In this document: positions 24,301 to 59,843 of the stretch, piece by piece
Layout of the letters: each line of letters opens with the position of its first letter
How positions within the stretch are numbered: position 1 is the first letter of the stretch
Origin: Auanema rhodensis
Lineage: Eukaryota; Animalia; Nematoda
Length of the DNA: 64,000 nucleotides
Assembly: GCA_964057225.1 (NCBI GenBank)
Contig: OZ059898.1
Location: forward strand, 11,284,001-11,348,000
Direction: 5' to 3'
Program-made: the position numbers and the translations under genes
Notes under the pieces: model-generated
Seen by the model: only the letters and a program-made list of their open reading frames with translations
Told to the model about the DNA's origin: nothing
The model's database searches: none

Positions 24301-26923
24301 AAACAAATTGGTTGAAAATGAAAAACATGTAATGGGACACATAGAGTTCAGTACACGTGCATCATGATGTTCTTAGGATATATAGATCTTCTGACGCAAA
24401 AAATAAGAACAAGGAGCTTTGAAATATAATGATGTTGAGAGTCTTTCGAGAATATGCAGAGTAAGACAAGAAAAAACTTTGAGGTACATACACATCTCAT
24501 ATATATATATTTTTCTTATGAATTTAATATTATATGATGTGTGATCACGTTAAAAACAGATATGAAAAACATAAAATTCGGCAAGATATGACAGTAAAAG
24601 ATAAAATGAACAAACTTTATTCAAATATTCATAGATTTACTATCACTATACATAGACAATATAGATTACTTCATATATAAGTAGATAAATCTGGTTGGAT
24701 CTTGGAAATTAAAATTTACAGGCTTAGTTTTAACTATGGATATCGCATCTCTGTCTCTTCTCAATGAAACATATATGATGCATTTTCAAGAATTATTTTA
24801 TTACAATGAACTTGAGAGAAAATATTTTTAAATGTTCATATTTATATAATTTTTCAATTATTATATTGTATATTTCAGAACATTTATGTTAAATACATAT
24901 TTGTTTATGTAAATGTTAGTATGTTGACATTGTATCGAATACATGATTTTGCTGTTTTTCAACTATAATAGTCGAAAAAAAAACATATTTTAAGTTTATC
25001 TTTAATATTCAAAAAAAAAATTCAAGCATTCATTGAGAACATATAGATTAAAGGATTTCGAAAGGGCTTCGAAACTATGTATATTTGGATAGAATTATGG
25101 GGGAGGGCAGTTGATGTCTGAGGTTACACTTCAACGGATATATGGCAAGAGGATTTCCTGTTCAATGCCAAGGGTGTTGAATTCGTCTGCATTCCGAGTC
25201 TCACACCAGTACGTCATCAGCTTTCAGTGTATTCCCTATTTCGAATTTTCTATGTTTATTTTCAAATATATATTGATTTAGTAAGTTATAAAAAGTGATA
25301 GCAGGTGATCAAATAAAAATCGTTAAGAAAAACGCTCAGTTACATACATATTGGAAAATTATTCTAATATGACCTGTTTTCATTAATGAAAAATATTTTA
25401 GAAAACTAATGAATCTGTCAGATGAGCGGGGATAATATCATTACAAACAGATACAAAGTAGAGGAAACAGGTAATTAATTTAAAATTTCTAAAGACACGC
25501 AATATCTATTGTACAAAATATTCCGTGACAAAGTAACAGCGAAGGAAAAGAAAGAGAAGCGGGGAGATAACGATGGGGAAGAAGAAGTAATGAAAGAGCA
25601 GATGAGAGTCAGTTCCATTCAGGACCATTCATTTAATCATGTGCTATTGAACGTCCAACTCAATTAACAATCCAAGAATCTATAAAGCCATTCTAATTCT
25701 GAACCTAAATAAATAAAAACTTTCTATGTACAAATGTATTTAACGCGTGCTTGATTTACTCAGTTAAAAGTGTGAAATATCCGTCCAAAATAGAAGATAA
25801 AAATCATTTAAGCAACATAAGGAAAGCAGACATTTACTGAAATGTAATGAACATGGCGTAGTTGAATAAGCTAAAAAAGATGCAGAAAGAAAGGAGAAAA
25901 ATTATGTGAATCTAACAGTAAAATGACTTTTATTTGAAATCTTACATAATATTTTGCATTAATTTTTTTAATTCACCAAATATCAACGTCAAACTTACCA
26001 TTCTTTTTTGAAAACCGAATTTAAAGGTTGAATTAATTCACTAATTATATAATTTTGAAAACAAAATTGATCAGTGCTATATAGTGAAGAATAATAATAA
26101 ATGCATGCAATTATGAAATCAGAACAAATATTAAAACAGTTGAAAAAAAAAACTCGAAATACGCTAAAATGCATGGAATTGACATGGAATTGACATGATA
26201 ATACATTGATCAACAGCACTATATTTGAATTGATTTTGATAAATAAAAAAAGCAACTCTTCAGCAAGACTAAGAAAATAAAATGAAGAAATTGCTAGAAG
26301 TATAAAAACAAAAAAATCGTTTTGAAAACGAATACACAGATGGGAAATTATGTAATTGAGCATGCATACATACATATGCTAGCTATTAAAAGATAATAAT
26401 AAAAAACATTAAAAACAAAATTTTCAAATAAATTTCAGAAAAATCAGATTAATTTTAACAGAAGTATGAAAAGTAATAACAACAGTTTTCAAGGTAAAGT
26501 AGAAACGATAACGCAGAAACGAAAAATTATAATTCCAAAATTGTATATTCTGTTTATATTATTACATGATACGAAAATATGTTTGGAATGATAAATATTG
26601 AAATACTTCATACGCTAGATGAAGCTATTATCGGCCTCTACAAAAGAAACTACTTCTTTTCTAGTCTTATAAACAATCATTGTTAACGTCTAATCGTACG
26701 CATACATTAATAATGCAAAATGTTTATGATAGCACTAAGTTCGAAATCATTTACGATGCGACGGGGTAAGATTCGCGTGGATGAATTTCCAGTCATGCAT
26801 ATTTTATCAACAGCTTATCTAAACGATATACCTCGAATATGAAAGTATATACTTCATTTGAGCTTGAAACATTAAGGTCAAATGAATCTATCACTTTAAC
26901 TGTAAAGTAAAATCCTTCTACAA

Positions 26924-27005
26924 GCAGTCATGTCCGAGTGGTTAAGGAGATTGACTAGAAATCAATTGGGCTCTGCCCGCGTAGGTTCGAATCCTGCTGA
27001 CTGCG
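26924..27005 (+). tRNA. tRNA-Ser(AGA), first copy of the array (representative unit)
   Basis: GCAGTCATGTCCGAGTGGTTAAGGAGATTGACTAGAAATCAATTGGGCTCTGCCCGCGTAGGTTCGAATCCTGCTGACTGCG. Acceptor stem GCAGTCA/TGACTGC, anticodon arm ATTGA-CTAGAAA-TCAAT, long variable arm GGGC-TCT-GCCC, T-loop TTCGAAT, discriminator G. Confidence 0.98.
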
Positions 27006-27009
27006 AATA

Positions 27010-27033
27010 TTTTGCATGAGAAATCAATTTTTT
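27010..27033 (+). terminator. Pol III oligo-dT terminators of the tRNA unit (repeated in every unit)
   Basis: T4 begins 5 nt after the tRNA 3' end and a T6 run lies at 27028-27033; further T runs follow. Confidence 0.8.
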
Positions 27034-30000
27034 GATCCCTTTTGATCTTATTCCAAAAAGTACGAGATCATTGCGTCTATCACTTGAACTGTGAAGTATA
27101 TTCCCTCTACAAGCAGTCATGTCCGAGTGGTTAAGGAGATTGACTAGAAATCAATTGGGCTCTGCCCGCGTAGGTTCGAATCCTGCTGACTGCGAATATT
27201 TTGCATGAGAAATCAACTTTTTGATCCCATTTGATCTAATTCCAATAAGTACGAGAACATTGCGTCTATCACTTTAACTGTAAAGTATATTCCTTCTACA
27301 AGCAGTCATGTCCGAGTGGTTAAGGAGATTGACTAGAAATCAATTGGGCTCTGCCCGCGTAGGTTCGAATCCTGCTGACTGCGAATATTTTGCATGAGAA
27401 ATCCATTTTTTGATCCTTTTTGATCTAATTCCAATAAGTACGAGATCCTTGCGTCTATCACTTTAACTGTAAAGTATATTCCTTCTACAAGCAGTCATGT
27501 CCGAGTGGTTAAGGAGATTGACTAGAAATCAATTGGGCTCTGCCCGCGTAGGTTCGAATCCTGCTGACTGCGAATATTTTGCATGAGAAATCCATTTTTT
27601 GATCCTTTTTGATCTAATTCCAATAAGTACGAGATCATTGCGTCTATCACTTTAACTGTAAAGTATATTCCCTCTACAAGCAGTCATGTCCGAGTGGTTA
27701 AGGAGATTGACTAGAAATCAATTGGGCTCTGCCCGCGTAGGTTCGAATCCTGCTGACTGCGAATATTTTGCATGAGAAATCCATTTTTTGATCCTTTTTG
27801 ATCTAATTCCAATAAGTACGAGATCATTGCGTCTATCACTTTAACTGTAAAGTATATTCCCTCTACAAGCAGTCATGTCCGAGTGGTTAAGGAGATTGAC
27901 TAGAAATCAATTGGGCTCTGCCCGCGTAGGTTCGAATCCTGCTGACTGCGAATATTTTGCATGAGAAATCCATTTTTTGATCCTTTTTGATCTAATTCCA
28001 ATAAGTACGAGATCATGGCGTCTATCACTTTAACTGTAAAGTATATTCCTTCTACAAGCAGTCATGTCCGAGTGGTTAAGGAGATTGACTAGAAATCAAT
28101 TGGGCTCTGCCCGCGTAGGTTCGAATCCTGCTGACTGCGAATATTTTGCATGAGAAATCCATTTTTTGATCCTTTTTGATCTAATTCCAATAAGTACGAG
28201 ATCATTGCGTCTATCACTTTAACTGTAAAGTATATTCCCTCTACAAGCAGTCATGTCCGAGTGGTTAAGGAGATTGACTAGAAATCAATTGGGCTCTGCC
28301 CGCGTAGGTTCGAATCCTGCTGACTGCGAATATTTTGCATGAGAAATCAACTTTTTGATCCCATTTGATCTAATTCCAATAAGTACGAGAACATTGCGTC
28401 TATCACTTTAACTGTAAAGTATATTCCTTCTACAAGCAGTCATGTCCGAGTGGTTAAGGAGATTGACTAGAAATCAATTGGGCTCTGCCCGCGTAGGTTC
28501 GAATCCTGCTGACTGCGAATATTTTGCATGAGAAATCAATTTTTTGATCCTTTTTGATCTAATTCCAATAAGTACGAGATCATGGCGTCTATCACTTTAA
28601 CTGTAAAGTATATTCCTTCTACAAGCAGTCATGTCCGAGTGGTTAAGGAGATTGACTAGAAATCAATTGGGCTCTGCCCGCGTAGGTTCGAATCCTGCTG
28701 ACTGCGAATATTTTGCATGAGAAATGAATTTTTTGATCCCTTTTGATCTTATTCCAAAAAGTACGAGATCATTGCGTCTATCACTTGAACTGTGAAGTAT
28801 ATTCCTTCTACAAGCAGTCATGTCCGAGTGGTTAAGGAGATTGACTAGAAATCAATTGGGCTCTGCCCGCGTAGGTTCGAATCCTGCTGACTGCGAATAT
28901 TTTGCATGAGAAATCAATTTTTTGATCCTTTTTGATCTAATTCCAATAAGTACGAGATCATTGCGTCTATCACTTTAACTGTAAAGTATATTCCCTCTAC
29001 AAGCAGTCATGTCCGAGTGGTTAAGGAGATTGACTAGAAATCAATTGGGCTCTGCCCGCGTAGGTTCGAATCCTGCTGACTGCGAATATTTTGCATGAGA
29101 AATCAACTTTTTGATCCCATTTGATCTAATTCCAATAAGTACGAGAACATTGCGTCTATCACTTTAACTGTAAAGTATATTCCTTCTACAAGCAGTCATG
29201 TCCGAGTGGTTAAGGAGATTGACTAGAAATCAATTGGGCTCTGCCCGCGTAGGTTCGAATCCTGCTGACTGCGAATATTTTGCATGAGAAATCCATTTTT
29301 TGATCCTTTTTGATCTAATTCCAATAAGTACGAGATCATTGCGTCTATCACTTTAACTGTAAAGTATATTCCCTCTACAAGCAGTCATGTCCGAGTGGTT
29401 AAGGAGATTGACTAGAAATCAATTGGGCTCTGCCCGCGTAGGTTCGAATCCTGCTGACTGCGAATATTTTGCATGAGAAATCCATTTTTTGATCCTTTTT
29501 GATCTAATTCCAATAAGTACGAGATCATGGCGTCTATCACTTTAACTGTAAAGTATATTCCTTCTACAAGCAGTCATGTCCGAGTGGTTAAGGAGATTGA
29601 CTAGAAATCAATTGGGCTCTGCCCGCGTAGGTTCGAATCCTGCTGACTGCGAATATTTTGCATGAGAAATCCATTTTTTGATCCTTTTTGATCTAATTCC
29701 AATAAGTACGAGATCATTGCGTCTATCACTTTAACTGTAAAGTATATTCCCTCTACAAGCAGTCATGTCCGAGTGGTTAAGGAGATTGACTAGAAATCAA
29801 TTGGGCTCTGCCCGCGTAGGTTCGAATCCTGCTGACTGCGAATATTTTGCATGAGAAATCAACTTTTTGATCCCATTTGATCTAATTCCAATAAGTACGA
29901 GAACATTGCGTCTATCACTTTAACTGTAAAGTATATTCCTTCTACAAGCAGTCATGTCCGAGTGGTTAAGGAGATTGACTAGAAATCAATTGGGCTCTGC

Positions 30001-32818
30001 CCGCGTAGGTTCGAATCCTGCTGACTGCGAATATTTTGCATGAGAAATCCATTTTTTGATCCTTTTTGATCTAATTCCAATAAGTACGAGATCCTTGCGT
30101 CTATCACTTGAACTGTGAAGTATATTCCTTCTACAAGCAGTCATGTCCGAGTGGTTAAGGAGATTGACTAGAAATCAATTGGGCTCTGCCCGCGTAGGTT
30201 CGAATCCTGCTGACTGCGAATATTTTGCATGAGAAATCAATTTTTTGATCCTTTTTGATCTAATTCCAATAAGTACGAGATCATGGCGTCTATCACTTTA
30301 ACTGTAAAGTATATTCCTTCTACAAGCAGTCATGTCCGAGTGGTTAAGGAGATTGACTAGAAATCAATTGGGCTCTGCCCGCGTAGGTTCGAATCCTGCT
30401 GACTGCGAATATTTTGCATGAGAAATGAATTTTTTGATCCCTTTTGATCTTATTCCAAAAAGTACGAGATCATTGCGTCTATCACTTGAACTGTGAAGTA
30501 TATTCCTTCTACAAGCAGTCATGTCCGAGTGGTTAAGGAGATTGACTAGAAATCAATTGGGCTCTGCCCGCGTAGGTTCGAATCCTGCTGACTGCGAATA
30601 TTTTGCATGAGAAATCAATTTTTTGATCCTTTTTGATCTAATTCCAATAAGTACGAGATCATTGCGTCTATCACTTTAACTGTAAAGTATATTCCCTCTA
30701 CAAGCAGTCATGTCCGAGTGGTTAAGGAGATTGACTAGAAATCAATTGGGCTCTGCCCGCGTAGGTTCGAATCCTGCTGACTGCGAATATTTTGCATGAG
30801 AAATCAACTTTTTGATCCCATTTGATCTAATTCCAATAAGTACGAGAACATTGCGTCTATCACTTTAACTGTAAAGTATATTCCTTCTACAAGCAGTCAT
30901 GTCCGAGTGGTTAAGGAGATTGACTAGAAATCAATTGGGCTCTGCCCGCGTAGGTTCGAATCCTGCTGACTGCGAATATTTTGCATGAGAAATCAATTTT
31001 TTGATCCTTTTTGATCTAATTCCAATAAGTACGAGATCATTGCGTCTATCACTTTAACTGTAAAGTATATTCCCTCTACAAGCAGTCATGTCCGAGTGGT
31101 TAAGGAGATTGACTAGAAATCAATTGGGCTCTGCCCGCGTAGGTTCGAATCCTGCTGACTGCGAATATTTTGCATGAGAAATCCATTTTTTGATCCTTTT
31201 TGATCTAATTCCAATAAGTACGAGATCATTGCGTCTATCACTTTAACTGTAAAGTATATTCCCTCTACAAGCAGTCATGTCCGAGTGGTTAAGGAGATTG
31301 ACTAGAAATCAATTGGGCTCTGCCCGCGTAGGTTCGAATCCTGCTGACTGCGAATATTTTGCATGAGAAATCAATTTTTTGATCCTTTTTGATCTAATTC
31401 CAATAAGTACGAGATCATTGCGTCTATCACTTTAACTGTAAAGTATATTCCCTCTACAAGCAGTCATGTCCGAGTGGTTAAGGAGATTGACTAGAAATCA
31501 ATTGGGCTCTGCCCGCGTAGGTTCGAATCCTGCTGACTGCGAATATTTTGCATGAGAAATCCATTTTTTGATCCTTTTTGATCTAATTCCAATAAGTACG
31601 AGAACATTGCGTCTATCACTTTAACTGTAAAGTATATTCCTTCTACAAGCAGTCATGTCCGAGTGGTTAAGGAGATTGACTAGAAATCAATTGGGCTCTG
31701 CCCGCGTAGGTTCGAATCCTGCTGACTGCGAATATTTTGCATGAGAAATCCATTTTTTGATCCTTTTTGATCTAATTCCAATAAGTACGAGATCATGGCG
31801 TCTATCACTTTAACTGTAAAGTATATTCCCTCTACAAGCAGTCATGTCCGAGTGGTTAAGGAGATTGACTAGAAATCAATTGGGCTCTGCCCGCGTAGGT
31901 TCGAATCCTGCTGACTGCGAATATTTTGCATGAGAAATCCATTTTTTGATCCTTTTTGATCTAATTCCAATAAGTACGAGATCATGGCGTCTATCACTTT
32001 AACTGTAAAGTATATTCCTTCTACAAGCAGTCATGTCCGAGTGGTTAAGGAGATTGACTAGAAATCAATTGGGCTCTGCCCGCGTAGGTTCGAATCGTGC
32101 TGACTGCGAATATTTTGCATGAGAAATCAACTTTTTGATCACATTTGATCTAATTCCAATAAGTACGAGATCATTGCGTCTATCACTTTAACTGTAAAGT
32201 ATATTCCTTCTACAAGCAGTCATGTCCGAGTGGTTAAGGAGATTGACTAGAAATCAATTGGGCTCTGCCCGCGTAGGTTCGAATCCTGCTGACTGCGAAT
32301 ATTTTGCATGAGAAATCAATTTTTTGATCCTTTTTGATCTAATTCCAATAAGTACGAGATCATGGCGTCTATCACTTTAACTGTAAAGTATATTCCTTCT
32401 GCAAGCAGTCATGTCCGAGTGGTTAAGGAGATTGACTAGAAATCAATTGGGCTCTGCCCGCGTAGGTTCGGGGTGGCGGACGTTTCGTCGTCTCTAGTTT
32501 GTGAACTAGTTCAGGCTGATCATTAGAGGGCAAACTTTATGATAATGTGCTGACAAGTGCCAGTGTTCATGTAACTCGGGGTGCTATTAAAGCTATAAAT
32601 CTATAGAATTCAGTTATAAGTGGCTACATACCTTGAAGTGCCATCAAAATATAAATTGAAAAAAGCAGAAATTAAAATAAACATACAGTTCTATCAACCA
32701 GGCTATCATCAAACAGTTTCAAGTCAACAGTTACGTGAGTTCATAGTAATAGTTGTTAGTTTATCTTTTCTTTCGATAAGTTTGCTTATTCACACTTTCT
32801 CATCTTTTCTCGTTCATC

Positions 32819-34885
32819 ATGATTTTTCCTTCTACTTTCTGTCCATTTTCTCTGATGATTAACGCTCAGGGTAAATCTGTTCTTGTTTCTCAGCCTTTTG
32901 ATAATGTTCCTTCGGAGAACATAACTATCTTTTTTAATAATTCTTCGGTAAATACTCAGAATCTTGAAGTTTATTCAAATGATGTAACTTCACTCTCATT
33001 TTTGAATTTCACTCTTCCATCTTTTAATATCCCTCCATTGAGGCAGCAAAATGTTAATTTTGCTTCTGCTCTTTCTCTAGCAAATTCATCTGCGGCATCT
33101 TCTTCAGTTGAATCTGTTGCTACAGTTACTGTTCCTACTGTCAACAGCGTTCCACTGTTCTCTTCTTCTACTTCACATCTTTCTATTCAGCCTTCTTCTT
33201 CTTCTTCTGCCGTTCATTCTTCACCGTCATCTTCTCTTTCTTCTTCTCCTCCTTCTGTTTCCTCTCCTTCTTTACCTGTTCTCTCTCCTTCTTCTTCTGT
33301 TCCCTCTCCTTCTTCTTCTGTTCCCTCTCCTTCTTCTTCTGTTCCCTCTCCTTCTTCTTCTGTTCCCTCTCCTTCTTCTTCATTTTCTTCGCAATCTGCA
33401 AATCCTAACTCATACGCCGCTCTCATTGCGCCTTCTAAGCAGGGTGTACACCCCTGTTTAGAATATAAATTTGAAAACTTGCTGTATCGCTACCAATTCA
33501 GTAGTAAAAGTTCTCAAAAAGCTTATTCTATTTATCGTTGCACAGGTTGTAAACATTTGGGTAAATACACTTCTATCAAAGTAGAAAATAATGTATTTCT
33601 CGAAAATCCTATTGCTCAAAACTATCATTGTGATCCATTTTTGTTTTCTATTAACAAATGCAAAAATATCACATACTCTCTAACTCAGAATATCAAAAGT
33701 TCAGACTCATGTTTTGAGATGAAAGCATATTCCTTATTTGTCAATGAAATAAAAAAAATATTTCATGAATCTGAGTTAGAAGAGCATGAAAAGCAAGAAG
33801 TTACCTCTGCTTGGTTTCATGGTGGCTATGACAGTAGACGTAGAGCTATTACAAGGGCTTTAAGTTCTCGTAAAGACTTAAGAACATCCATGACCAATGT
33901 TCCTCTGTCTCTGTCTAAAACTATCAATGGTCGTACGTTCTTGCATTTTCATGACAGCGAGTTTCATTTGTATTTCGATACATTTTGTTTGGAACTAGCT
34001 GTTCAGCATGGTTTAACTCATTTGCTTGGGGACGGTTGTTTCAAATACCAGCCTTTGGATATGGAACAAACATATACCATCATGGGCGGTTGCAGAAATG
34101 GAACAACTGTACCTCTTTTCTATTCCATTTTAAAAAATAAGAGTAGGTTCACTTATAGAAGGCTTCTTCAACATATTGCACTAGCTCTCTCCAACGTTGG
34201 TTGCATAGTTGAAAACCTTATTTTTATCTGTGATTTTGAGATCGCTGTAATAAGGGAAGCTGAAACTATTTTTAATTCTGTTCAAGGATGTGCATTTCAT
34301 TATGCTCAGAGCTTGAACAGACGGTCTCTTCAACTGGGTTTGACACAAGCAGAGAAGCAATCCATTGAAATCAAACAATGGCATGGTCGGCTGCTGGGCT
34401 TGCTCTTCCTTCAAACTGATCTTATCTCACGGTCCGGGTTACTCAATTCTCCTGTTTCTTCTGATCATCCATCATATTCTTCTTGTCTTCAAATGATCAG
34501 TTATGTGAATGAAACATGGATTGAAGGACCTTTGCGACATTATTGGAACAAATGGGACATAAAACAGTTTCGTACATCTAATAATGTTGAATCTTTTCAC
34601 CGTAAAATGAAGACTATTTTATCTTGCTCTCATCCTCCTCTTTCTGAATTAATTACTTTTTTTCATGGTGAAAATTTGATGGCTAATCATGTCCTGATCG
34701 CTTTGTCATCGAATGTTGAGCCTGCCAGGAAAAAAAGAAAAAACGTAATTGAGAGGCAACAACGGATTGAGGTTCAGTTTGAAAACTTTAGGAGCATCTC
34801 CAATAACCGACTGCCTAATCAGCAAGAAATAATAGCATATGTCGAGGAGATGGCGAAGTTTAACACCAGAAAATCTTATTTTTGA
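32819..34885 (+). CDS. MULE DDE transposase with Ser/Pro-rich N-terminus (688 aa)
   Basis: Catalytic motifs GDGCF (D), CDFE (D), GCAFHY (CxxH), RTSNNVESFH (E); upstream YRCTGC...HC zinc-binding-like motif; basic RKKRK. True start codon uncertain. Confidence 0.9.
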   Translation: MIFPSTFCPFSLMINAQGKSVLVSQPFDNVPSENITIFFNNSSVNTQNLEVYSNDVTSLSFLNFTLPSFNIPPLRQQNVNFASALSLANSSAASSSVESVATVTVPTVNSVPLFSSSTSHLSIQPSSSSSAVHSSPSSSLSSSPPSVSSPSLPVLSPSSSVPSPSSSVPSPSSSVPSPSSSVPSPSSSFSSQSANPNSYAALIAPSKQGVHPCLEYKFENLLYRYQFSSKSSQKAYSIYRCTGCKHLGKYTSIKVENNVFLENPIAQNYHCDPFLFSINKCKNITYSLTQNIKSSDSCFEMKAYSLFVNEIKKIFHESELEEHEKQEVTSAWFHGGYDSRRRAITRALSSRKDLRTSMTNVPLSLSKTINGRTFLHFHDSEFHLYFDTFCLELAVQHGLTHLLGDGCFKYQPLDMEQTYTIMGGCRNGTTVPLFYSILKNKSRFTYRRLLQHIALALSNVGCIVENLIFICDFEIAVIREAETIFNSVQGCAFHYAQSLNRRSLQLGLTQAEKQSIEIKQWHGRLLGLLFLQTDLISRSGLLNSPVSSDHPSYSSCLQMISYVNETWIEGPLRHYWNKWDIKQFRTSNNVESFHRKMKTILSCSHPPLSELITFFHGENLMANHVLIALSSNVEPARKKRKNVIERQQRIEVQFENFRSISNNRLPNQQEIIAYVEEMAKFNTRKSYF
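33284..33381 (+). repeat. Coding 21-bp minisatellite TCTCCTTCTTCTTCTGTTCCC (SPSSSVP), about 4.7 units
   Basis: Directly visible; copy 2 has one unit fewer (36713-36789). Confidence 0.95.
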
Positions 34886-35124
34886 ATCATTTAACTTGAA
34901 AAACTAAACTCTAATAAATTTTTTGAACCATATCTTTTTTTTCTAACACAAAAACCTCCTTGCCGTTTAGATTGAAAACCTTGATTTTTTATGAACTGTT
35001 TAAGTTTTTGGGTAATTTTTAGAAGTCTAAACGACCAAAAACTGAGAGTACAACACGTGTGGTATAATTTACGACCGTTATGTTTGCTGGGGAGAGGTTG
35101 TAAAAATAGGAGACGACGAAACGT

Positions 35125-35899
35125 CTCTGCCCGCGTAGGTTCGAATCCTGCTGACTGCGAATATTTTGCATGAGAAATCAACTTTTTGATCCCATTTGAT
35201 CTAATTTCAATAAGTACGAGATCATTGCGTCTATCACTTTAACTGTAAAGTATATTCCTTCTACAAGCAGTCATGTCCGAGTGGTTAAGGAGATTGACTA
35301 GAAATCAATTGGGCTCTGCCCGCGTAGGTTCGAATCCTGCTGACTGCGAATATTTTGCATGATAAATCAATTTTTTGATGCTTTTTGATCTAATTCCTAT
35401 ATGTACGAAATCATTGCGTCTATCACTTTAACTGTAAAGTATATTCCTTCTACAAGCAGTCATGTCCGAGTGGTTAAGGAGATTGACTAGAAATCAATTG
35501 GGCTCTGCCCGCGTAGGTTCGAATCCTGCTGACTGCGAATATTTTGCATGATAAATCAATTTTTTGATCCTTTTTGATCTTATTCCAAAAAGTACGAGAT
35601 CATTGCGTCTATCACTTGAACTGTATAGTATATTCCTTCTACAAGCAGTCATGTCCGAGTGGTTAAGGAGATTGACTAGAAATCAATTGGGCTCTGCCCG
35701 CGTAGGTTCGAATCCTGCTGACTGCGAATATTTTGCATGAGAAATCAATTTTTTGATCCTTTTTGATCTAATTCCAATAAGTACGAGATCATGGCGTCTA
35801 TCACTTTAACTGTAAAGTATATTCCTTCTGCAAGCAGTCATGTCCGAGTGGTTAAGGAGATTGACTAGAAATCAATTGGGCTCTGCCCGCGTAGGTTCG
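35125..35899 (+). repeat. tRNA-Ser(AGA) array block B: 3' fragment, 3 full-length genes, 5' fragment
   Basis: Fragment nt 48-82 at 35125-35159; full genes start at 35267, 35456 and 35645; fragment nt 1-66 at 35834-35899. Confidence 0.95.
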
Positions 35900-45546: not shown

Positions 45547-45961
45547 TATCGCGAATGCGATTATTCATCATTCAATCGATGCAATCTCATCACGTTGGCT
45601 GATGAGATTCACGGGCACTCTGTTTTATACCACCGTCGCGGACGGTCGCTTTTCTCTCTCCTCGTTGCTGTCTTTATCTTATGACTCATCTAGTCTGAAC
45701 CACCGTTTTATCCTTGTCCTTTAGTAAGACTATCTCTAGTCTCATTAGTGATGTATATCTAGTCTTATTACATTCACTCTAGTCTTCTATGTACTTTATC
45801 TAGTCTTATTATATATCTTCTAGTCCTTATATTCTGTATTATGTATATCTGAATGGCATATGAATGAATCTTTCTTCCTCTAATAGTCTTTTACGTTAAC
45901 AGGGCATAGAATAGAAAGTGTGAACCTGGGAGGCTATTTGAAAAGCCCTCTATCTTCAAAA
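45547..45961 (+). repeat. BEL/Pao 3' LTR (415 bp)
   Basis: Start defined by the 19-bp match to the element 5' end; end defined by the TSD. Confidence 0.85.
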
Positions 45962-48900: not shown

Positions 48901-51900
48901 GTACTTATTGGAATTAGATCAAAAAGCATCAAAAAAATGATTTCTCATGCAAAATATTCGCAGTCAGCACGATTCGAACCTACGCGGGCAGAGCCCAATT
49001 GATTTCTAGTCAATCTCCTTAACCACTCGGACATGACTGCTTGTAGAAGGAATATACTTCACAGTTAAAGTGATAGACGCAATGATCTCGTACTTATTGG
49101 AATAAGATCAAAAAGCATCAAAAAAGTGATTTGTCATGCAAAATATTCGCAGTCAGCAGGATTCGAACCTACGCGGGCAGAGCCCAATTGATTTCTAGTC
49201 AATCTCCTTAACCACTCGGACATGACTGCTTGTAGAAGGAATATACTGTAAAGTTAAAGTGATAGACGCAATGATCTCGTACTTTTTGGAATAAGATCAA
49301 ATGGGATCAAAAAATTGATTTGTCATGCAAAATATTCGCAGTCAGCAGGATTCGAACCTACGCGGGCAGAGCCCAATTGATTTCTAGTCAATCTCCTTAA
49401 CCACTCGGACATGACTGCTTGTAGAAGGAATATACTTTACAGTTGAAGTGATAGACGCAATGATTTCGTACATATTTGAATTAGATCAAAAAGCATCAAA
49501 AAATTGATTTCTCATGCAAAATATTCGCAGTCAGCAGGATTCGAACCTACGCGGGCAGAGCCCAATTGATTTCTAGTCAATCTCCTTAACCACTCGGACA
49601 TGACTGCTTGTAGAAGGAATATACTTTACAGTTAAAGTGATAGACGCAATGATGTCGTACTTTTTGGAATAAGATCAAAAGGGATCAAAAAATTGATTTC
49701 TCATGCAAAATATTCGCAGTCAGCAGGATTCGAACCTACGCGGGCAGAGCCCAATTGATTTCTAGTCAATCTCCTTAACCACTCGGACATGACTGCTTGT
49801 AGAATGAATACACTTTACAGTTAAAGTGATAGACGCAATGATCTCGTACTTTTTGGAATAAGATCAAAAGGGATCAAAAAATTGATTTCTCATGCAAAAT
49901 ATTCGCAGTCAGCAGGATTCGAACCTACGCGGGCCGAGCCCAATTGATTTCTAGTCAATCTCCTTAACCACTCGGACATGACTGCTTGTAGAAGGAATAT
50001 ACTTCACAGTTCAAGTGATAGACGCAATGATCTCGTACTTTTTGGAATAAGATCAAAAGGGATCAAAAAATTGATTTCTCATGCAAAATATTCGCAGTCA
50101 GCAGGATTCGAACCTACGCGGGCCGAGCCCAATTGATTTCTAGTCAATCTCCTTAACCACTCGGACATGACTGCTTGTAGAATGAATACACTTTACAGTT
50201 AAAGTGATAGACGCAATGATCTCGTACTTTTTGGAATAAGATCAAAAGGGATCAAAAAATTGATTTCTCATGCAAAATATTCGCAGTCAGCAGGATTCGA
50301 ACCTACGCGGGCCGAGCCCAATTGATTTCTAGTCAATCTCCTTAACCACTCGGACATGACTGCTTGTAGAAGGAATATACTTTACAGTTAAAGTGATAGA
50401 CGCAATGATCTCGTACTTTTTGGAATAAGATCAAAAGGGATCAAAAAATTGATTTCTCATGCAAAATATTCGCAGTCAGCAGGATTCGAACCTACGCGGG
50501 CAGAGCCCAATTGATTTCTAGTCAATCTCCTTAACCACTCGGACATGACTGCTTGTAGAATGAATACACTTTACAGTTAAAGTGATAGACGCAATGATCT
50601 CGTACTTTTTGGAATAAGATCAAAAGGGATCAAAAAATTGATTTCTCATGCAAAATATTCGCAGTCAGCAGGATTCGAACCTACGCGGGCAGAGCCCAAT
50701 TGATTTCTAGTCAATCTCCTTAACCACTCGGACATGACTGCTTGTAGAAGGAATATACTTTACAGTTAAAGTGATAGACGCAATGATCTCGTACTTTTTG
50801 GAATAAGATCAAAAGGGATCAAAAAATTGATTTCTCATGCAAAATATTCGCAGTCAGCAGGATTCGAACCTACGCGGGCAGAGCCCAATTGATTTCTAGT
50901 CAATCTCCTTAACCACTCGGACATGACTGCTTGTAGAAGGAATATACTTTACAGTTAAAGTGATAGACGCAATGATCTCGTACTTTTTGGAATAAGATCA
51001 AAAGGGATCAAAAAATTGATTTCTCATGCAAAATATTCGCAGTCAGCAGGATTCGAACCTACGCGGGCAGAGCCCAATTGATTTCTAGTCAATCTCCTTA
51101 ACCACTCGGACATGACTGCTTGTAGAAGGAATATACTTCACAGTTAAAGTGATAGACGCAATGATCTCGTACTTATTGGAATTAGATCAAAAAGCATCAA
51201 AAAAATGATTTCTCATGCAAAATATTCGCAGTCAGCACGATTCGAACCTACGCGGGCAGAGCCCAATTGATTTCTAGTCAATCTCCTTAACCACTCGGAC
51301 ATGACTGCTTGTAGAAGGAATATACTTCACAGTTAAAGTGATAGACGCAATGATCTCGTACTTATTGGAATAAGATCAAAAAGCATCAAAAAAGTGATTT
51401 CTCATGCAAAATATTCGCAGTCAGCAGGATTCGAACCTACGCGGGCATAGCCCAATTGATTTCTAGTCAATCTCCTTAACCACTCGGACATGACTGCTTG
51501 TAGAAGGAATATACTTTACAGTTAAAGTGATAGACGCAATGATTTCGTACTTTTTGGAATAAGATCAAATGGGATCAAAAAATTGATTTGTCATGCAAAA
51601 TATTCGCAGTCAGCAGGATTCGAACCTACGCGGGCAGAGCCCAATTGATTTCTAGTCAATCTCCTTAACCACTCGGACATGACTGCTTGTAGAAGGAATA
51701 TACTGTAAAGTTAAAGTGATAGACGCAATGATCTCGTACTTTTTGGAATAAGATCAAATGGGATCAAAAAATTGATTTGTCATGCAAAATATTCGCAGTC
51801 AGCAGGATTCGAACCTACGCGGGCAGAGCCCAATTGATTTCTAGTCAATCTCCTTAACCACTCGGACATGACTGCTTGTAGAAGGAATATACTTTACAGT

Positions 51901-54900
51901 TAAAGTGATAGACGCAATGATCTCGTACTTTTTGGAATAAGATCAAAAGGGATCAAAAAATTGATTTCTCATGCAAAATATTCGCAGTCAGCAGGATTCG
52001 AACCTACGCGGGCAGAGCCCAATTGATTTCTAGTCAATCTCCTTAACCACTCGGACATGACTGCTTGTAGAAGGAATATACTTCACAGTTAAAGTGATAG
52101 ACGCAATGATCTCGTACTTATTGGAATTAGATCAAAAAGCATCAAAAAAATGATTTCTCATGCAAAATATTCGCAGTCAGCACGATTCGAACCTACGCGG
52201 GCAGAGCCCAATTGATTTCTAGTCAATCTCCTTAACCACTCGGACATGACTGCTTGTAGAAGGAATATACTTCACAGTTAAAGTGATAGACGCAATGATC
52301 TCGTACTTATTGGAATAAGATCAAAAAGCATCAAAAAAGTGATTTCTCATGCAAAATATTCGCAGTCAGCAGGATTCGAACCTACGCGGGCATAGCCCAA
52401 TTGATTTCTAGTCAATCTCCTTAACCACTCGGACATGACTGCTTGTAGAAGGAATATACTTTACAGTTAAAGTGATAGACGCAATGATTTCGTACTTTTT
52501 GGAATAAGATCAAATGGGATCAAAAAATTGATTTGTCATGCAAAATATTCGCAGTCAGCAGGATTCGAACCTACGCGGGCAGAGCCCAATTGATTTCTAG
52601 TCAATCTCCTTAACCACTCGGACATGACTGCTTGTAGAAGGAATATACTGTAAAGTTAAAGTGATAGACGCAATGATCTCGTACTTTTTGGAATAAGATC
52701 AAATGGGATCAAAAAATTGATTTGTCATGCAAAATATTCGCAGTCAGCAGGATTCGAACCTACGCGGGCAGAGCCCAATTGATTTCTAGTCAATCTCCTT
52801 AACCACTCGGACATGACTGCTTGTAGAAGGAATATACTGTAAAGTTAAAGTGATAGACGCAATGATCTCGTACTTTTTGGAATAAGATCAAATGGGATCA
52901 AAAAATTGATTTGTCATGCAAAATATTCGCAGTCAGCAGGATTCGAACCTACGCGGGCAGAGCCCAATTGATTTCTAGTCAATCTCCTTAACCACTCGGA
53001 CATGACTGCTTGTAGAAGGAATATACTGTAAAGTTAAAGTGATAGACGCAATGATCTCGTACTTTTTGGATTAAGATCAAATGGGATCAAAAAATTGATT
53101 TGTCATGCAAAATATTCGCAGTCAGCAGGATTCGAACCTACGCGGGCAGAGCCCAATTGATTTCTAGTCAATCTCCTTAACCACTCGGACATGACTGCTT
53201 GTAGAAGGAATATACTTTACAGTTGAAGTGATAGACGCAATGATTTCGTACATATTTGAATTAGATCAAAAAGCATCAAAAAATTGATTTGTCATGCAAA
53301 ATATTCGCAGTCAGCAGGATTCGAACCTACGCGGGCAGAGCCCAATTGATTTCTAGTCAATCTCCTTAACCACTCGGACATGACTGCTTGTAGAAGGAAT
53401 ATACTGTAAAGTTAAAGTGATAGACGCAATGATCTCGTACTTTTTGGAATAAGATCAAATGGGATCAAAAAATTGATTTGTCATGCAAAATATTCGCAGT
53501 CAGCACGATTCGAACCTACGCGGGCAGAGCCCAATTGATTTCTAGTCAATCTCCTTAACCACTCGGACATGACTGCTTGTAGAAGGAATATACTGTAAAG
53601 TTAAAGTGATAGACGCAATGATCTCGTACTTTTTGGAATAAGATCAAATGGGATCAAAAAATTGATTTCTCATGCAAAATATTCGCAGTCAGCAGGATTC
53701 GAACCTACGCGGGCAGAGCCCAATTGATTTCTAGTCAATCTCCTTAACCACTCGGACATGACTGCTTGTAGAAGGAATATACTTTACAGTTAAAGTGATA
53801 GACGCAATGATCTCGTACTTTTTGGAATAAGATCAAAAGGGATCAAAAAATTGATTTCTCATGCAAAATATTCGCAGTCAGCAGGATTCGAACCTACGCG
53901 GGCAGAGCCCAATTGATTTCTAGTCAATCTCCTTAACCACTCGGACATGACTGCTTGTAGAAGGAATATACTTTACAGTTAAAGTGATAGACGCAATGAT
54001 CTCGTACTTTTTGGAATAAGATCAAAAGGGATCAAAAAATTGATTTCTCATGCAAAATATTCGCAGTCAGCAGGATTCGAACCTACGCGGGCAGAGCCCA
54101 ATTGATTTCTAGTCAATCTCCTTAACCACTCGGACATGACTGCTTGTAGAAGGAATATACTTTACAGTTAAAGTGATAGACGCAATGATCTCGTACTTTT
54201 TGGAATAAGATCAAAAGGGATCAAAAAATTCATTTCTCATGCAAAATATTCGCAGTCAGCAGGATTCGAACCTACGCGGGCAGAGCCCAATTGATTTCTA
54301 GTCAATCTCCTTAACCACTCGGACATGACTGCTTGTAGAAGGAATATACTTCACAGTTAAAGTGATAGACGCAATGATCTCGTACTTATTGGAATTAGAT
54401 CAAAAAGCATCAAAAAAATGATTTCTCATGCAAAATATTCGCAGTCAGCACGATTCGAACCTACGCGGGCAGAGCCCAATTGATTTCTAGTCAATCTCCT
54501 TAACCACTCGGACATGACTGCTTGTAGAAGGAATATACTTCACAGTTAAAGTGATAGACGCAATGATCTCGTACTTATTGGAACAAGATCAAAAAGCATC
54601 AAAAAAGTGATTTCTCATGCAAAATATTCGCAGTCAGCAGGATTCGAACCTACGCGGGCATAGCCCAATTGATTTCTAGTCAATCTCCTTAACCACTCGG
54701 ACATGACTGCTTGTAGAAGGAATATACTTTACAGTTAAAGTGATAGACGCAATGATTTCGTACATATTTGAATTAGATCAAAAAGCATCAAAAAATTGAT
54801 TTCTCATGCAAAATATTCGCAGTCAGCAGGATTCGAACCTACGCGGGCAGAGCCCAATTGATTTCTAGTCAATCTCCTTAACCACTCGGACATAACTGCT

Positions 54901-57900
54901 TGTAGAAGGAATATACTTTACAGTTAAAGTGATAGACGCAATGATGTCGTACTTTTTGGAATAAGATCAAAAGGGATCAAAAAATTGATTTCTCATGCAA
55001 AATATTCGCAGTCAGCAGGATTCGAACCTACGCGGGCAGAGCCCAATTGATTTCTAGTCAATCTCCTTAACCACTCGGACATGACTGCTTGTAGAATGAA
55101 TACACTTTACAGTTAAAGTGATAGACGCAATGATCTCGGACTTTTTGGAATAAGATCAAAAGGGATCAAAAAATTGATTTCTCATGCAAAATATTCGCAG
55201 TCAGCAGGATTCGAACCTACGCGGGCCGAGCCCAATTGATTTCTAGTCAATCTCCTTAACCACTCGGACATGACTGCTTGTAGAAGGAATATACTTCACA
55301 GTTCAAGTGATAGACGCAATGATCTCGTACTTTTTGGAATAAGATCAAAAGAGATCAAAAAATTCATTTCTCATGCAAAATATTCGCAGTCAGCAGGATT
55401 CGAACCTACGCGGGCAGAGCCCAATTGATTTCTAGTCAATCTCCTTAACCACTCGGACATGACTGCTTGTAGAAGGAATATACTTTACAGTTAAAGTGAT
55501 AGACGCAATGATCTCGTACTTTTTGGAATAAGATCAAAAGGGATCAAAAAATTGATTTCTCATGCAAAATATTCGCAGTCAGCAGGATTCGAACCTACGC
55601 GGGCAGAGCCCAATTGATTTCTAGTCAATCTCCTTAACCACTCGGACATGACTGCTTGTAGAAGGAATATACTTTACAGTTAAAGTGATAGACGCAATGA
55701 TCTCGTACTTTTTGGAATAAGATCAAAAGGGATCAAAAAATTGATTTCTCATGCAAAATATTCGCAGTCAGCAGGATTCGAACCTACGCGGGCAGAGCCC
55801 AATTGATTTCTAGTCAATCTCCTTAACCACTCGGACATGACTGCTTGTAGAAGGAATATACTTTACAGTTAAAGTGATAGACGCAATGATCTCGTACTTT
55901 TTGGAATAAGATCAAAAGGGATCAAAAAATTGATTTCTCATGCAAAATATTCGCAGTCAGCAGGATTCGAACCTACGCGGGCAGAGCCCAATTGATTTCT
56001 AGTCAATCTCCTTAACCACTCGGACATGACTGCTTGTAGAAGGAATATACTTCACAGTTCAAGTGATAGACGCAATGATGTCGTACTTTTTGGAATAAGA
56101 TCAAAAGGGATCAAAAAATTCATTTCTCATGCAAAATATTCGCAGTCAGCAGGATTCGAACCTACGCGGGCAGAGCCCAATTGATTTCTAGTCAATCTCC
56201 TTAACCACTCGGACATGACTGCTTGTAGAATGAATACACTTTACAGTTAAAGTGATAGACGCAATGATCTCGTACTTTTTGGAATAAGATCAAAAGGGAT
56301 CAAAAAATTGATTTCTCATGCAAAATATTCGCAGTCAGCAGGATTCGAACCTACGCGGGCAGAGCCCAATTGATTTCTAGTCAATCTCCTTAACCACTCG
56401 GACATGACTGCTTGTAGAATGAATACACTTTACAGTTAAAGTGATAGACGCAATGATCTCGTACTTTTTGGAATAAGATCAAAAGGGATCAAAAAATTGA
56501 TTTCTCATGCAAAATATTCGCAGTCAGCAGGATTCGAACCTACGCGGGCAGAGCCCAATTCATTTCTAGTCAATCTCCTTAACCACTCGGACATGACTGC
56601 TTGTAGAATGAATACACTTTACAGTTAAAGTGATAGACGCAATGATCTCGTACTTTTTGGAATAAGATCAAAAGGGATCAAAAAATTGATTTCTCATGCA
56701 AAATATTCGCAGTCAGCAGGATTCGAACCTACGCGGGCCGAGCCCAATTGATTTCTAGTCAATCTCCTTAACCACTCGGACATGACTGCTTGTAGTAGGA
56801 ATATACTTCACAGTTCAAGTGATAGACGCAATGATCTCGTACTTTTTGGAATAAGATCAAAAGAGATCAAAAAATTCATTTCTCATGCAAAATATTCGCA
56901 GTCAGCAGGATTCGAACCTACGCGGGCAGAGCCCAATTGATTTCTAGTCAATCTCCTTAACCACTCGGACATGACTGCTTGTAGAAGGAATATACTTTAC
57001 AGTTAAAGTGATAGACGCAATGATCTCGTACTTTTTGGAATAAGATCAAAAGGGATCAAAAAATTGATTTCTCATGCAAAATATTCGCAGTCAGCAGGAT
57101 TCGAACCTACGCGGGCAGAGCCCAATTGATTTCTAGTCAATCTCCTTAACCACTCGGACATGACTGCTTGTAGAAGGAATATACTTTACAGTTAAAGTGA
57201 TAGACGCAATGATCTCGTACTTTTTGGAATAAGATCAAAAGGGATCAAAAAATTGATTTCTCATGCAAAATATTCGCAGTCAGCAGGATTCGAACCTACG
57301 CGGGCAGAGCCCAATTGATTTCTAGTCAATCTCCTTAACCACTCGGACATGACTGCTTGTAGAATGAATACACTTTACAGTTAAAGTGATTGACGCAATG
57401 GTCTCGTACTTTTTGGAATAAGATCAAAAGGGATCAAAAAATTGATTTCTCATGCAAAATATTCGCAGTCAGCAGGATTCGAACCTACGCGGGCAGAGCC
57501 CAATTGATTTCTAGTCAATCTCCTTAACCACTCGGACATGACTGCTTGTAGAAGGAATATACTTTACAGTTAAAGTGATAGACGCAATGATCTCGTACTT
57601 TTTGGAATAAGATCAAAAGGGATCAAAAAATTGATTTCTCATGCAAAATATTCGCAGTCAGCAGGATTCGAACCTACGCGGGCAGAGCCCAATTGATTTC
57701 TAGTCAATCTCCTTAACCACTCGGACATGACTGCTTGTAGAAGGAATATACTTTACAGTTAAAGTGATAGACGCAATGATCTCGTACTTTTTGGAATAAG
57801 ATCAAAAGGGATCAAAAAATTGATTTCTCATGCAAAATATTCGCAGTCAGCAGGATTCGAACCTACGCGGGCAGAGCCCAATTGATTTCTAGTCAATCTC

Positions 57901-59843
57901 CTTAACCACTCGGACATGACTGCTTGTAGAAGGAATATACTTTACAGTTAAAGTGATAGACGCAATGATCTCGTACTTTTTGGAATAAGATCAAAAGGGA
58001 TCAAAAAATTGATTTCTCATGCAAAATATTCGCAGTCAGCAGGATTCGAACCTACGCGGGCAGAGCCCAATTGATTTCTAGTCAATCTCCTTAACCACTC
58101 GGACATGACTGCTTGTAGAAGGAATATACTTTACAGTTAAAGTGATAGACGCAATGATCTCGTACTTTTTGGAATAAGATCAAAAGGGATCAAAAAATTG
58201 ATTTGTTATGCAAAATATTCGCAGTCAGCAGGATTCGAACTTACGCGGGCAGAGCCCAATTGATTTCTAGTCAATCTCCTTAACCACTCGGACATGACTG
58301 CTTGTAGAAGGAATATACTTTACAGTTGAAGTGATAGACGCAATGATCTCGTACTTTTTGGAATAAGATCAAAAAGAATCAAAAAATTGATTTCTCATGC
58401 AAAATATTCGCAGTCAGCAGGATTCGAACCTACGCGGGCATAGCCCAATTGATTTCTAGTCAATCTCCTTAACCACTCGGACATGACTGCTTGTAAAAGT
58501 AATATACTTTACAGTTAAAATGATAGACGCAATGATCTCCTACTTTTTGGAATAAGATCAAAAGGGATCAAAAAATTGATTTCTCATGCAAAATATTCGC
58601 AGTCAGCAGGATTCGAACCTACGCGGGCAGAGCCCAATTGATTTCTAGTCAATCTCCTTAACCACTCGGACATGACTGCTTGTAGAAGGAATATACTTTA
58701 CAGTTAAAGTGATAGACGCAATGATCTCGTACTATTTGGAATAAGATCAAAAGGGATCAAAAAGTTGATTTGTCATGCAAAATATTCGCAGTCAGCAGGA
58801 TTCGAACCTACGCGGGCAGAGCCCATTTGATTTCTAGTCAATCTCCTTAACCACTCGGACATGACTGCTTGTAGAAGGAATATACTTTACAGTTAAAGTG
58901 ATAGACGCAATGATCTCGTACTTTTTGGAATAAGATCGAAAGGGATCAAAAAATTGATTTCTCATGCAAAATATTCGCAGTCAGCAGGATTCGAACCTAC
59001 GCGGGCAGAGCCCAATTGATTTCTAGTCAATCTCCTTAACCACTCGGACATGACTGCATGTATAAGGAATATACTTTACAGTTAAAGTGATAGACGCAAT
59101 GATCTCGTACTTTTTGGAATAAGATCAAATGGGATCAAAAAATTGATTTGTCATGCAAAATATTCGCAGTCAGCAGGATTCGAACCTACGCGGGCAGAGC
59201 CCAATTGATTTCTAGTCAATCTCCTGAACCACTCGGACATGACTGCTCGTAAAAGGAATATACTTTACAGTTAAAGTGATACACGCAATGATTTCGTACT
59301 TTTTGGAATAAGATCAAAAGGGATCAAAAAATTGAATTCTCATGCAAAATATTCGCAGTCAGCAGGATTCGAACCTACGCGGGCAGAGCCCAATTGATTT
59401 CTAGTCAATCTCCTTAACCACTCGGACATGACTGCTTGTAAAAGTAATATACTTTACAGTTAAAGTGATAGCCGCAATGATTTCGTACATATTAGAATTA
59501 GATCAAAAAGCATCAAAAAATTGATTTGTCATGCAAAATATTCGCAGTCAGCAGGATTCGAACCTACGCGGGCAGAGCCCAATTGATTTCTAGTCAATCT
59601 CCTTAACCACTCGGACATGACTGCTTGTAAAAGTAATATACTTTACAGTTAAAATGATAGACGCAATGATCTCGTACTATTTGGAATAAGATCAAAAGGG
59701 ATCAAAAAGTTGATTTCTCATGCAAAATATTCGCAGTCAGCAGGATTCGAACCTACGCGTGCAGAGCCCAATTGATTTCTAGTCAATCTCCTTAACCACT
59801 CGGACATGACTGCTTGTAGAAGGAATTTACTTTACAGTTAAAG
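45962..59843 (-). repeat. tRNA-Ser(AGA) array block D (inverted): one fragment plus 73 full-length genes
   Basis: Fragment 45962-46015; full genes from 46123-46204 to 59732-59813 at 189-bp spacing, with one 190-bp unit near 48540. Confidence 0.96.

What the first reader, a model, noticed from the sequence alone, without database searches (positions are those of the whole stretch)
26887..59843. Satellite-like array of about 122 tRNA-Ser(AGA) genes at a 189-bp period
Seen: 29+3+17+73 full-length genes of a single isoacceptor, each with its own terminator; I saw no anticodon change. Known: animal tRNA genes are usually dispersed or loosely clustered, while long homogeneous tandem arrays are best known from Entamoeba. 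Inference: the copy number probably exceeds decoding need, and the nucleosome-sized period suggests a structural role (TFIIIC/condensin platform, boundary, germline-restricted DNA) or a source of tRNA fragments.
Basis: partly seen in the sequence, partly recalled or inferred. Interest (0 to 1): 0.75.

Follow-up and report, generated by a model that had tools for sequence, protein, structure and literature searches.

The report
Giant tandem serine-tRNA gene array
The window holds 122 of 404 head-to-tail, mostly intact copies of one serine tRNA gene on chromosome 5 of the nematode Auanema rhodense; this genome is already reported to carry about 19,500 tRNA genes in such arrays, so the array is real and striking but one of many.

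Summary
Every copy keeps the anticodon and has a T-run 4-5 nt after the gene. The first 32 genes are on the + strand and the other 90 on the - strand. The array also runs far beyond the window: 404 copies in 144 kb (C6:11,310,924-11,454,922), half of it transposon insertions.

The genome is the 180.9-Mb germline assembly of Auanema rhodense. A 2026 preprint reports 19,554 tRNA genes there and elimination of 61% of the DNA from body cells. This scan has already noted sister arrays for many other tRNAs in the same genome.

Copies are young: 77% are identical in the tRNA. Rare mutations hit tRNA and spacer equally and mostly break stems, but no variant that has spread lies in the tRNA or its terminator. 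This suggests constraint on the gene over time, not on each copy.

I recovered the published chromosome-break motif. The nearest site is 640 kb to the left, and none lies in the 194 kb around the array. My estimate is about 75% that the array is kept in body cells and about 25% that it is germline-only; read depth would settle it. The period varies from 167 to 268 bp among sister arrays, so a nucleosome-based role is not supported.

The parts
26887..32470 (+). Array block 1: 29 tRNA-Ser(AGA) genes, 29.5 units of 189 bp. The left edge is at unit position 1 and abuts unique DNA. The right edge is cut inside a gene at tRNA position 66.
27113..27194 (+). Representative gene, identical to the array consensus: 82 nt, class II cloverleaf, anticodon AGA at position 34, perfect B box, discriminator G.
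27199..27202 (+). Pol III terminator-like T4 run 5 nt after the gene. It is present in all 122 copies. The 14 nt after the gene are as invariant as the tRNA itself.
32471..35124 (+). MULE (Mutator-like) transposon copy 1 inserted in a gene; transposase ORF at 32819-34885.
35125..35899 (+). Array block 2: 3 genes (4.1 units) between the two MULE copies.
35900..38541 (+). MULE copy 2 (ORF 36248-38293). Its left junction is identical over 300 nt to that of copy 1, so unit-plus-MULE was duplicated as a block. The array changes strand across this element.
31149..38542 (.). One arm of a 7.4-kb inverted segmental duplication (7 units, MULE, 4 units, MULE). It is 99.2% identical to the reverse complement of C6:11388070-11395462, about 66 kb away. 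This explains the strand switch.
38542..41909 (-). Array block 3: 17 genes.
41910..45961 (+). Remnant of a BEL/Pao-type LTR retroelement (ORF 42101-44956 with integrase tail DUF5641 and a phlebovirus-G2-like fusion domain). It is inserted in a gene, and tRNA positions 50-54 are present on both sides (5-bp target duplication).
45962..59845 (-). Array block 4: 73 genes, 73.5 units.
59846..64000 (-). Start of an LTR retroelement of about 11 kb (pol ORF 60882-63989: RT, RNase H, integrase). The array resumes 11.1 kb further on, outside the window.
1..26886 (.). Unique, gene-bearing left flank, with exons of a WD40-repeat gene (about 4846-5454, -) and a flavin monooxygenase gene (16006-16425, +). 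No break-site motif is present here.

Best explanation
This is part of a recently amplified tandem array of complete RNA-polymerase-III transcription units for tRNA-Ser(AGA), on chromosome 5 of Auanema rhodense. Each 189-bp unit has a conserved 5' flank, an intact 82-nt gene with internal A and B boxes, and a T-run terminator. The locus holds 404 units in 144 kb. It grew by unequal exchange between units and by duplication of multi-unit blocks together with the transposons embedded in them. It is one case of a genome-wide habit of this species. Shown: identity, extent, intactness, mode of growth, and position relative to the chromosome-break sites. Inferred: the array as a whole still serves, or recently served, as a bulk source of the major serine tRNA. 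Single copies are individually dispensable, and transposons are tolerated because of that redundancy. The array most likely stays in body cells, about 640 kb inside the somatic chromosome made from the right arm.
For: Identity and intactness. The consensus folds as a canonical class II cloverleaf at -27.2 kcal/mol. Extent: 404 Ser(AGA) copies at C6:11310924-11454922, followed by a Gly(TCC) array. Of these, 310 have the identical tRNA sequence. Dispersed single genes elsewhere are 97-99% identical over the tRNA only. Species: the assembly is 180,911,798 bp against 180.9 Mb in the preprint. The break motif I recovered is centred at C6:16,502,175, matching the preprint's 'chromosome 5 position 16,502,174'. 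It also sits at the centre of the mre-11 palindrome on C7 and at six sites spaced 3,495 bp apart on C8, as the preprint describes for chromosome 6 and the X. Constraint: mean minor-allele frequency is 0.0032 in the tRNA and 0.0034 in the 14-nt trailer, against 0.039-0.069 in the spacers. Variants present in 40 or more copies occupy 0 of 82 tRNA sites against 14 of 93 spacer sites; variants in 5-39 copies occupy 8 of 82 against 37 of 93. Growth: there is sub-family and higher-order structure, and two block duplications of 8.3 kb (direct, 99.1%) and 7.4 kb (inverted, 99.2%). Fate: no break motif lies in C6:11274001-11468000. The nearest good site is at 10,673,145-173. The sample 27 kb to its right is non-repetitive and carries an enoyl-CoA hydratase exon. 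The sample 573 kb to its left is a copy of the LTR element that also sits in this array.
Against: Rare variants (present in at most 4 copies) are as frequent per site in the tRNA (0.52) as in the spacer (0.41, p = 0.27). In addition, 49 of 56 stem changes break a base pair. So nothing shows selection on individual copies. The lack of spread variants in the gene could also be a founder effect, from amplifying a few old functional genes whose spacers had already diverged. No expression data were available. Retention in body cells is not proven. I found only three of the four break sites expected on this chromosome. The best candidate for the fourth (C6:13,826,861; one half-site is identical to that of the site I infer to be a central break site on C1, the other half was not seen) lies to the right, which would put the array inside the eliminated segment.
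Confidence: 0.7

Rival explanations
1. The array is germline-restricted. It lies inside the central segment of chromosome 5 that is cut out at the 12-cell stage, so its 404 genes can act only in the germline and the earliest embryo. Body cells would then rely on the dispersed copies and on the small second array at 13.87 Mb.
For: The preprint states that eliminated DNA includes arrays of several tRNA loci. The well-supported central break site at 10,673,159 lies to the left of the array, and all three candidate partner sites lie to its right (12,336,932; 12,660,531; 13,826,861). No candidate partner was found between 9.0 and 10.67 Mb. The 157 kb from the array onward is entirely repeats.
Against: The preprint says break sites mark transitions from gene-rich to repeat-rich DNA and that eliminated blocks are typically over 90% repeats. 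The DNA 27 kb right of the break site is unique and gene-bearing, as is the 37 kb left of the array. The samples at 12.3 and 13.4 Mb are not tandemly repetitive. Site 12,660,531 has a GC-rich flank, and 12,336,932 has a mismatch in the conserved core. About one chance hit to the search pattern is expected in that interval. My two patterns could miss roughly 15-20% of true sites, so a left partner may exist unseen.
Confidence: 0.25
2. The array is essentially a satellite that happens to be built from a tRNA gene. It was amplified by replication slippage or unequal exchange with no benefit, is largely silenced, and is on its way to decay. The intact look reflects youth only.
For: Recent mutations are not filtered: rare-variant density is equal in tRNA and spacer, and most stem changes break pairs. 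Half of the locus is transposon insertions, several of them inside genes. Dozens of arrays for other tRNAs exist in the same genome (unchecked notes). Arabidopsis clustered tRNA genes are known to be silenced (my own knowledge, not checked here).
Against: No variant in the tRNA or its terminator has spread, while 14 spacer variants have reached 40 or more copies. Promoter boxes and terminators are intact in all 122 window copies. A 14-nt trailer that has no role in the mature RNA is as conserved as the gene, which points to transcription-level constraint.
Confidence: 0.3
3. The copy number is an assembly artefact: expansion or false duplication of a short array.
For: Highly repetitive DNA is hard to assemble, and I had no reads.
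Against: Units carry sub-family barcodes in a non-periodic order. There are 14 distinct insertions, and the two largest internal duplications differ by 0.8-0.9%, far above HiFi error. The preprint reports that most long reads map uniquely even in repeats.
Confidence: 0.03

Closest known systems
Tandem tRNA arrays of Auanema rhodense (Gonzalez de la Rosa et al., bioRxiv 10.64898/2026.08.27.747507)
   Same: Same genome and same kind of object. The preprint annotates 19,554 tRNA genes (only 215 pseudogenes) and mentions tandem blocks of several tRNA loci.
   Different: In the text I could read, the preprint mentions only tRNA arrays in germline-restricted DNA, in one sentence and without naming isoacceptors. 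This Ser(AGA) locus, its size, its anatomy and its probable location in retained DNA are not described there.
Entamoeba tRNA gene arrays (Clark 2006; Tawari 2008, cited in PMC2888827)
   Same: Long head-to-tail arrays of intact tRNA genes with short spacers, and a copy number far above decoding need.
   Different: Entamoeba units usually hold several different tRNAs and lie at chromosome ends (my own knowledge). Here each unit holds one gene, and the array is internal to the chromosome and riddled with transposons.
Zebrafish, stickleback and Nematostella tRNA gene expansions (PMC2888827)
   Same: Thousands of clustered tRNA genes in animals; lineage-specific and rapidly evolving.
   Different: Those clusters are mostly heterogeneous (adjacent genes for different amino acids). 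This array holds a single isoacceptor.
Arabidopsis chromosome 1 tRNA-Pro and Ser-Tyr-Tyr clusters; Xenopus 3.18-kb tDNA repeat (my own knowledge, not checked here)
   Same: Tandem amplification of functional-looking Pol III genes. The Arabidopsis clusters are largely silenced, a possible model for dosage control.
   Different: They have tens to about 150 copies and larger multi-gene units. No programmed DNA elimination occurs in those species.

Membership tests
tRNA gene (Rfam RF00005), serine isoacceptor AGA | Cloverleaf with long variable arm, anticodon AGA, score above the family threshold | tested here: met
   All 122 score 47-58 bits against a gathering score of 29. ARAGORN calls Ser(AGA) for all. 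The consensus folds as a class II cloverleaf.
Pol III type 2 transcription unit | Internal A and B boxes and a downstream run of at least four T | tested here: met
   There is a perfect B box at tRNA position 61. A T4+ run starts 4-5 nt downstream in 122 of 122 copies. Actual transcription was not testable.
Homogeneous tandem tRNA gene array | Head-to-tail units of constant period, one isoacceptor, many copies | tested here: met
   The 189-bp period holds in 385 of 404 successive spacings apart from insertions. All 404 copies are Ser(AGA).
Auanema rhodense germline assembly, chromosome 5 | Assembly size and published break-site coordinates reproduced | tested here: met
   The assembly is 180,911,798 bp against 180.9 Mb. 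The motif is centred at C6:16,502,175 against the published 16,502,174. The mre-11 boundary and the 3.5-kb periodic X motifs are also reproduced.
Germline-restricted (eliminated) DNA | Lies between two break sites on the eliminated side; low somatic read depth | tested here: inconclusive
   One central break site lies 640 kb to the left, and none lies within 194 kb around the array. The fourth site was not identified with confidence. Read depth was not available.
tRNA-derived satellite or SINE (decayed, non-coding) | tRNA-related part degenerate, promoter or structure lost in most copies | tested here: not met
   77% of copies have the identical intact tRNA, and all window copies pass the Rfam threshold.

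The most novel reading that the evidence does not exclude
The 404-copy array lies inside the central segment of chromosome 5 that is discarded from body cells (between the break site at 10,673,159 and a second one near 13,826,868). The worm would then physically adjust the dosage of its major serine tRNA gene about 20-fold between germline and soma, an oocyte-type tRNA supply removed by DNA elimination instead of by silencing.
Probability: 0.2. Interest if true: 0.6.

Novelty: new member of a known kind. Interest (0 to 1): 0.35.

Why it matters
By itself this is one more array in a genome already reported to hold about 19,500 tRNA genes. Two points make it useful. First, it is a clean, datable example of how such arrays grow: unit exchange, 7-8 kb block duplications carrying transposons, and one inversion. 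It also shows how mutation and constraint act on them, with no filter on single copies and no spread of variants inside the gene or terminator. Second, it probably sits in DNA kept in body cells, while sister arrays on other chromosomes are discarded. That gives a natural within-genome contrast for asking whether tRNA arrays decay faster once they are germline-only, and whether tRNA gene dosage is regulated by DNA elimination.

Tried and rejected
1. I suspected a recurrent 29-nt palindrome with a GGC...GCC core at the edges of array blocks of being a break site. It lies in direct orientation at both ends of 11.7-kb insertions, so it is part of an LTR.

2. Break-site patterns:
- A W-only flank pattern was uninformative, because true sites have G in the flanks.
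- C6:7,561,074 and 16,267,960 have non-palindromic GC-rich flanks and are taken as chance hits.
- C6:12,660,531 has a perfect 13-nt core but a GC-rich flank and is taken as probably chance.

I left that step out and used only a short core pattern.

5. An assembly artefact was considered and rejected (see rivals).

6. The window is nematode DNA, not human.
Full report
OBSERVATION. ARAGORN finds 122 tRNA-Ser(AGA) genes and nothing else in the window. They fall in blocks of 29 and 3 on the + strand and 17 and 73 on the - strand. Tandem Repeats Finder reports four arrays with a 189-bp period and 95-97% matches at 26887-32470, 35125-35899, 38538-41909 and 45962-59845. All 122 pass the Rfam tRNA threshold: about 57.8 bits for most, and 47-56 bits for 17 copies with one or two substitutions. 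Every copy has a run of at least four T starting 4-5 nt after the gene.

EXTENT. The window is C6:11,284,001-11,348,000 of a 180,911,798-bp assembly in 112 contigs. I fetched the neighbouring DNA and found that the Ser(AGA) locus runs from C6:11,310,924 to 11,454,922. It holds 404 genes in 144 kb, of which about 76 kb is array and the rest 14 insertions of 0.35-12.3 kb. A Gly(TCC) array with a 179-bp period follows directly.

A second, smaller Ser(AGA) array (15 genes, 179/189-bp units) lies at C6:13.875-13.889 Mb, again next to a Gly(TCC) array, this one with a 268-bp period. A Ser(CGA) array with a 167-bp period lies on C8. Several dispersed single genes are 97-99% identical over the tRNA only. 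The array therefore encodes the same mature tRNA as ordinary dispersed genes and holds roughly 94% of the copies I could count.

SPECIES. A note of this scan pointed to a 2026 preprint, which I read. The Auanema rhodense germline assembly spans 180.9 Mb and carries 19,554 annotated tRNA genes. [quoted passage not shown]

I recovered that motif from the genome by pattern search. Its core is GGCTNAGCC, with half-sites rich in T and a G nine bases from the centre. Three checks tie it to the paper:
- A site centred at C6:16,502,175 matches 'chromosome 5 around position 16,502,174'.
- A mirrored pair at C7:4,740,343/4,740,943 sits at the centre of the mre-11 palindrome, matching the chromosome 6 boundary.
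- Six sites 3,495 bp apart on C8 match the 3.5-kb periodic motifs on the X.

The genome is therefore that assembly, C6 is chromosome 5 and C8 is the X.

ANATOMY OF THE UNIT. Each 189-bp unit has four parts:
- 37 nt of 5' flank;
- the 82-nt gene;
- a 14-nt trailer containing the T4 run;
- 56 nt of distal spacer with a second T-run.

The consensus gene folds as a class II cloverleaf (7-bp acceptor stem, long variable arm, perfect B box, anticodon at position 34) at -27.2 kcal/mol.

VARIATION. Of the 404 copies, 310 have the identical tRNA sequence; in the window it is 93 of 122. Mean minor-allele frequency is 0.0032 in the tRNA, 0.0034 in the trailer, 0.039 in the 5' flank and 0.069 in the distal spacer. 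The spectrum by frequency class is more informative:

| Variant class | tRNA | Spacer |
|---|---|---|
| Rare (in at most 4 copies), derived alleles per site | 0.52 | 0.41 (p = 0.27) |
| Present in 5-39 copies, sites occupied | 8 of 82 | 37 of 93 |
| Present in 40 or more copies, sites occupied | 0 of 82 | 14 of 93 |

Within the tRNA, stems and loops are hit alike, and 49 of 56 stem changes break a pair.

My reading is as follows. Mutation enters everywhere, and single copies are not individually protected, as expected with 400-fold redundancy. What gets amplified and persists, however, has an intact gene and terminator. That is the pattern expected from selection on the array's output over longer times. 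A founder effect, meaning amplification of a few old functional genes with already diverged spacers, could give a similar picture. I cannot separate the two from sequence alone.

HOW IT GREW. Spacer variants define sub-families arranged in local higher-order patterns. The left and right halves of the locus use different sub-families. Two large young duplications exist:
- 8.3 kb direct, 99.1% identical (C6:11,354,930-11,363,213 and 11,368,649-11,376,932);
- 7.4 kb inverted, 99.2% identical (window 31149-38542 and C6:11,388,070-11,395,462).

The inverted one carries seven units, a MULE, four units and a second MULE, and it explains the strand switch in the window. The two MULE copies share an identical 300-nt left junction, so they are one insertion duplicated together with its array context.

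The other interruptions in the window are an LTR retroelement remnant with a 5-bp target duplication inside a gene and the start of an 11-kb LTR retroelement at 59846. All breaks in the array are transposon insertions, which a redundant array can tolerate.

FATE IN BODY CELLS. Samples along C6 show the shared autosomal 176/351-bp satellite from the left end to about 3.8 Mb and from 16.5 Mb to the right end. Non-satellite DNA lies in between.

Well-supported break sites on C6 are at 3,832,625/3,832,723, at 10,673,145-173 (a perfect palindrome) and at 16,502,161-189. The preprint says each autosome has four sites, so one central site is missing. No motif lies within C6:11,274,001-11,468,000, so the array shares the fate of its flanks.

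Points that lean towards retention:
- The sample 27 kb right of the 10.67-Mb site is unique and carries an enoyl-CoA hydratase exon.
- The 37 kb left of the array carries WD40 and flavin monooxygenase exons.
- The samples at 12.3 and 13.4 Mb are not tandemly repetitive.
- The sample at 10.1 Mb, left of the site, is a 98.6% copy of the 11.7-kb LTR element that also sits in this array.
- The preprint says break sites separate gene-rich retained DNA from repeat-rich eliminated DNA.

Taken together, these put the eliminated segment to the left and the array in the retained right arm.

Points that lean against retention:
- The only candidates for the fourth site lie to the right: 13,826,861 (one half identical to a half-site of C1:13,336,182, which I infer to be a central break site of C1; other half unseen), 12,336,932 (core mismatch) and 12,660,531 (GC-rich flank).
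- No candidate lies between 9.0 and 10.67 Mb.
- About one chance hit is expected in the right-hand interval, and my patterns could miss 15-20% of true sites.

I put retention at about 75%. Read depth would settle it at once.

Excess copy number is supported. The nucleosome-period argument is weak, because sister arrays range from 167 to 268 bp. Germline restriction is a fair idea in this species but is probably not the case here. Roles as a chromatin platform or a source of tRNA fragments cannot be judged from sequence.

COMPARISON AND NOVELTY. Tandem or clustered tRNA gene expansions are known from Entamoeba, zebrafish, stickleback and Nematostella (PMC2888827). From my own knowledge they are also known from Arabidopsis and Xenopus. 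The preprint already reports such arrays for this genome in outline. This scan had already noted arrays for Phe, Val, Ala, Arg, Asp and other Ser isoacceptors in it (unchecked notes). This is therefore a new, well-characterised member of a known kind.

LIMITS. No reads, expression data or chromatin data were available.

Noticed in passing
L025:5685-5756 (C6:13895685-13895756): One copy in the 268-bp Gly(TCC) array has its anticodon changed to TCA. ARAGORN calls it SeC(tca). It is a glycine tRNA body that would read the UGA stop codon if expressed and charged.
   Followed up: no
C6:10673145-10673173 (outside the window, 611 kb before its start): A perfect 29-nt palindrome matching the published break-site motif. 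It is very probably one of the two central break sites of chromosome 5. The fourth site of this chromosome was not found with confidence; the best candidate is C6:13826861.
   Followed up: partly
L037:1-3999 (C6:10100001-10104000) and C6:11400397-11404408: A young LTR retroelement with one open frame of over 1,333 aa holding protease, reverse transcriptase and a viral fusion-glycoprotein-like domain (Monjiviricetes fusion / herpesvirus gB). Two copies are 98.6% identical, one of them inside the Ser array. At least two 11.7-kb copies interrupt the array (C6:11395535-11407270 and 11415642-11427357).
   Followed up: partly
L026 (C8:6612041-6617886): A tandem array of at least 28 tRNA-Ser(CGA) genes at a 167-168-bp period on the X chromosome. 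It also has a strand switch (5 genes on +, then 23 on -).
   Followed up: partly
C6:11455880-11464460 (L021-L022): A tRNA-Gly(TCC) array (15 genes, 179-bp period) directly follows the Ser array. The same Ser-then-Gly neighbourhood recurs at C6:13.87-13.90 Mb with different periods, which suggests an old duplicated Ser/Gly locus that was amplified twice.
   Followed up: partly
window:32470-32471, 35124-35125, 35899-35900: The MULE junctions lie inside the tRNA: the left junction is at tRNA position 66 in the B box, and the array resumes at position 48. About 19 nt of the gene therefore flank the element on both sides, longer than the usual 9-11-bp MULE target duplication.
   Followed up: no
C8:14217203-14234691: Six break-site-like motifs occur at exactly 3,495-bp spacing on the X. 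They match the periodic motifs mentioned in the preprint (which counts five), so the motif sits inside a 3.5-kb tandem repeat.
   Followed up: no
window:21-27 of each unit (e.g. 27096-27102): An almost invariant TATA-like heptamer lies 11-17 nt upstream of each gene, inside an otherwise variable 5' flank. It may be an upstream Pol III promoter element.
   Followed up: no
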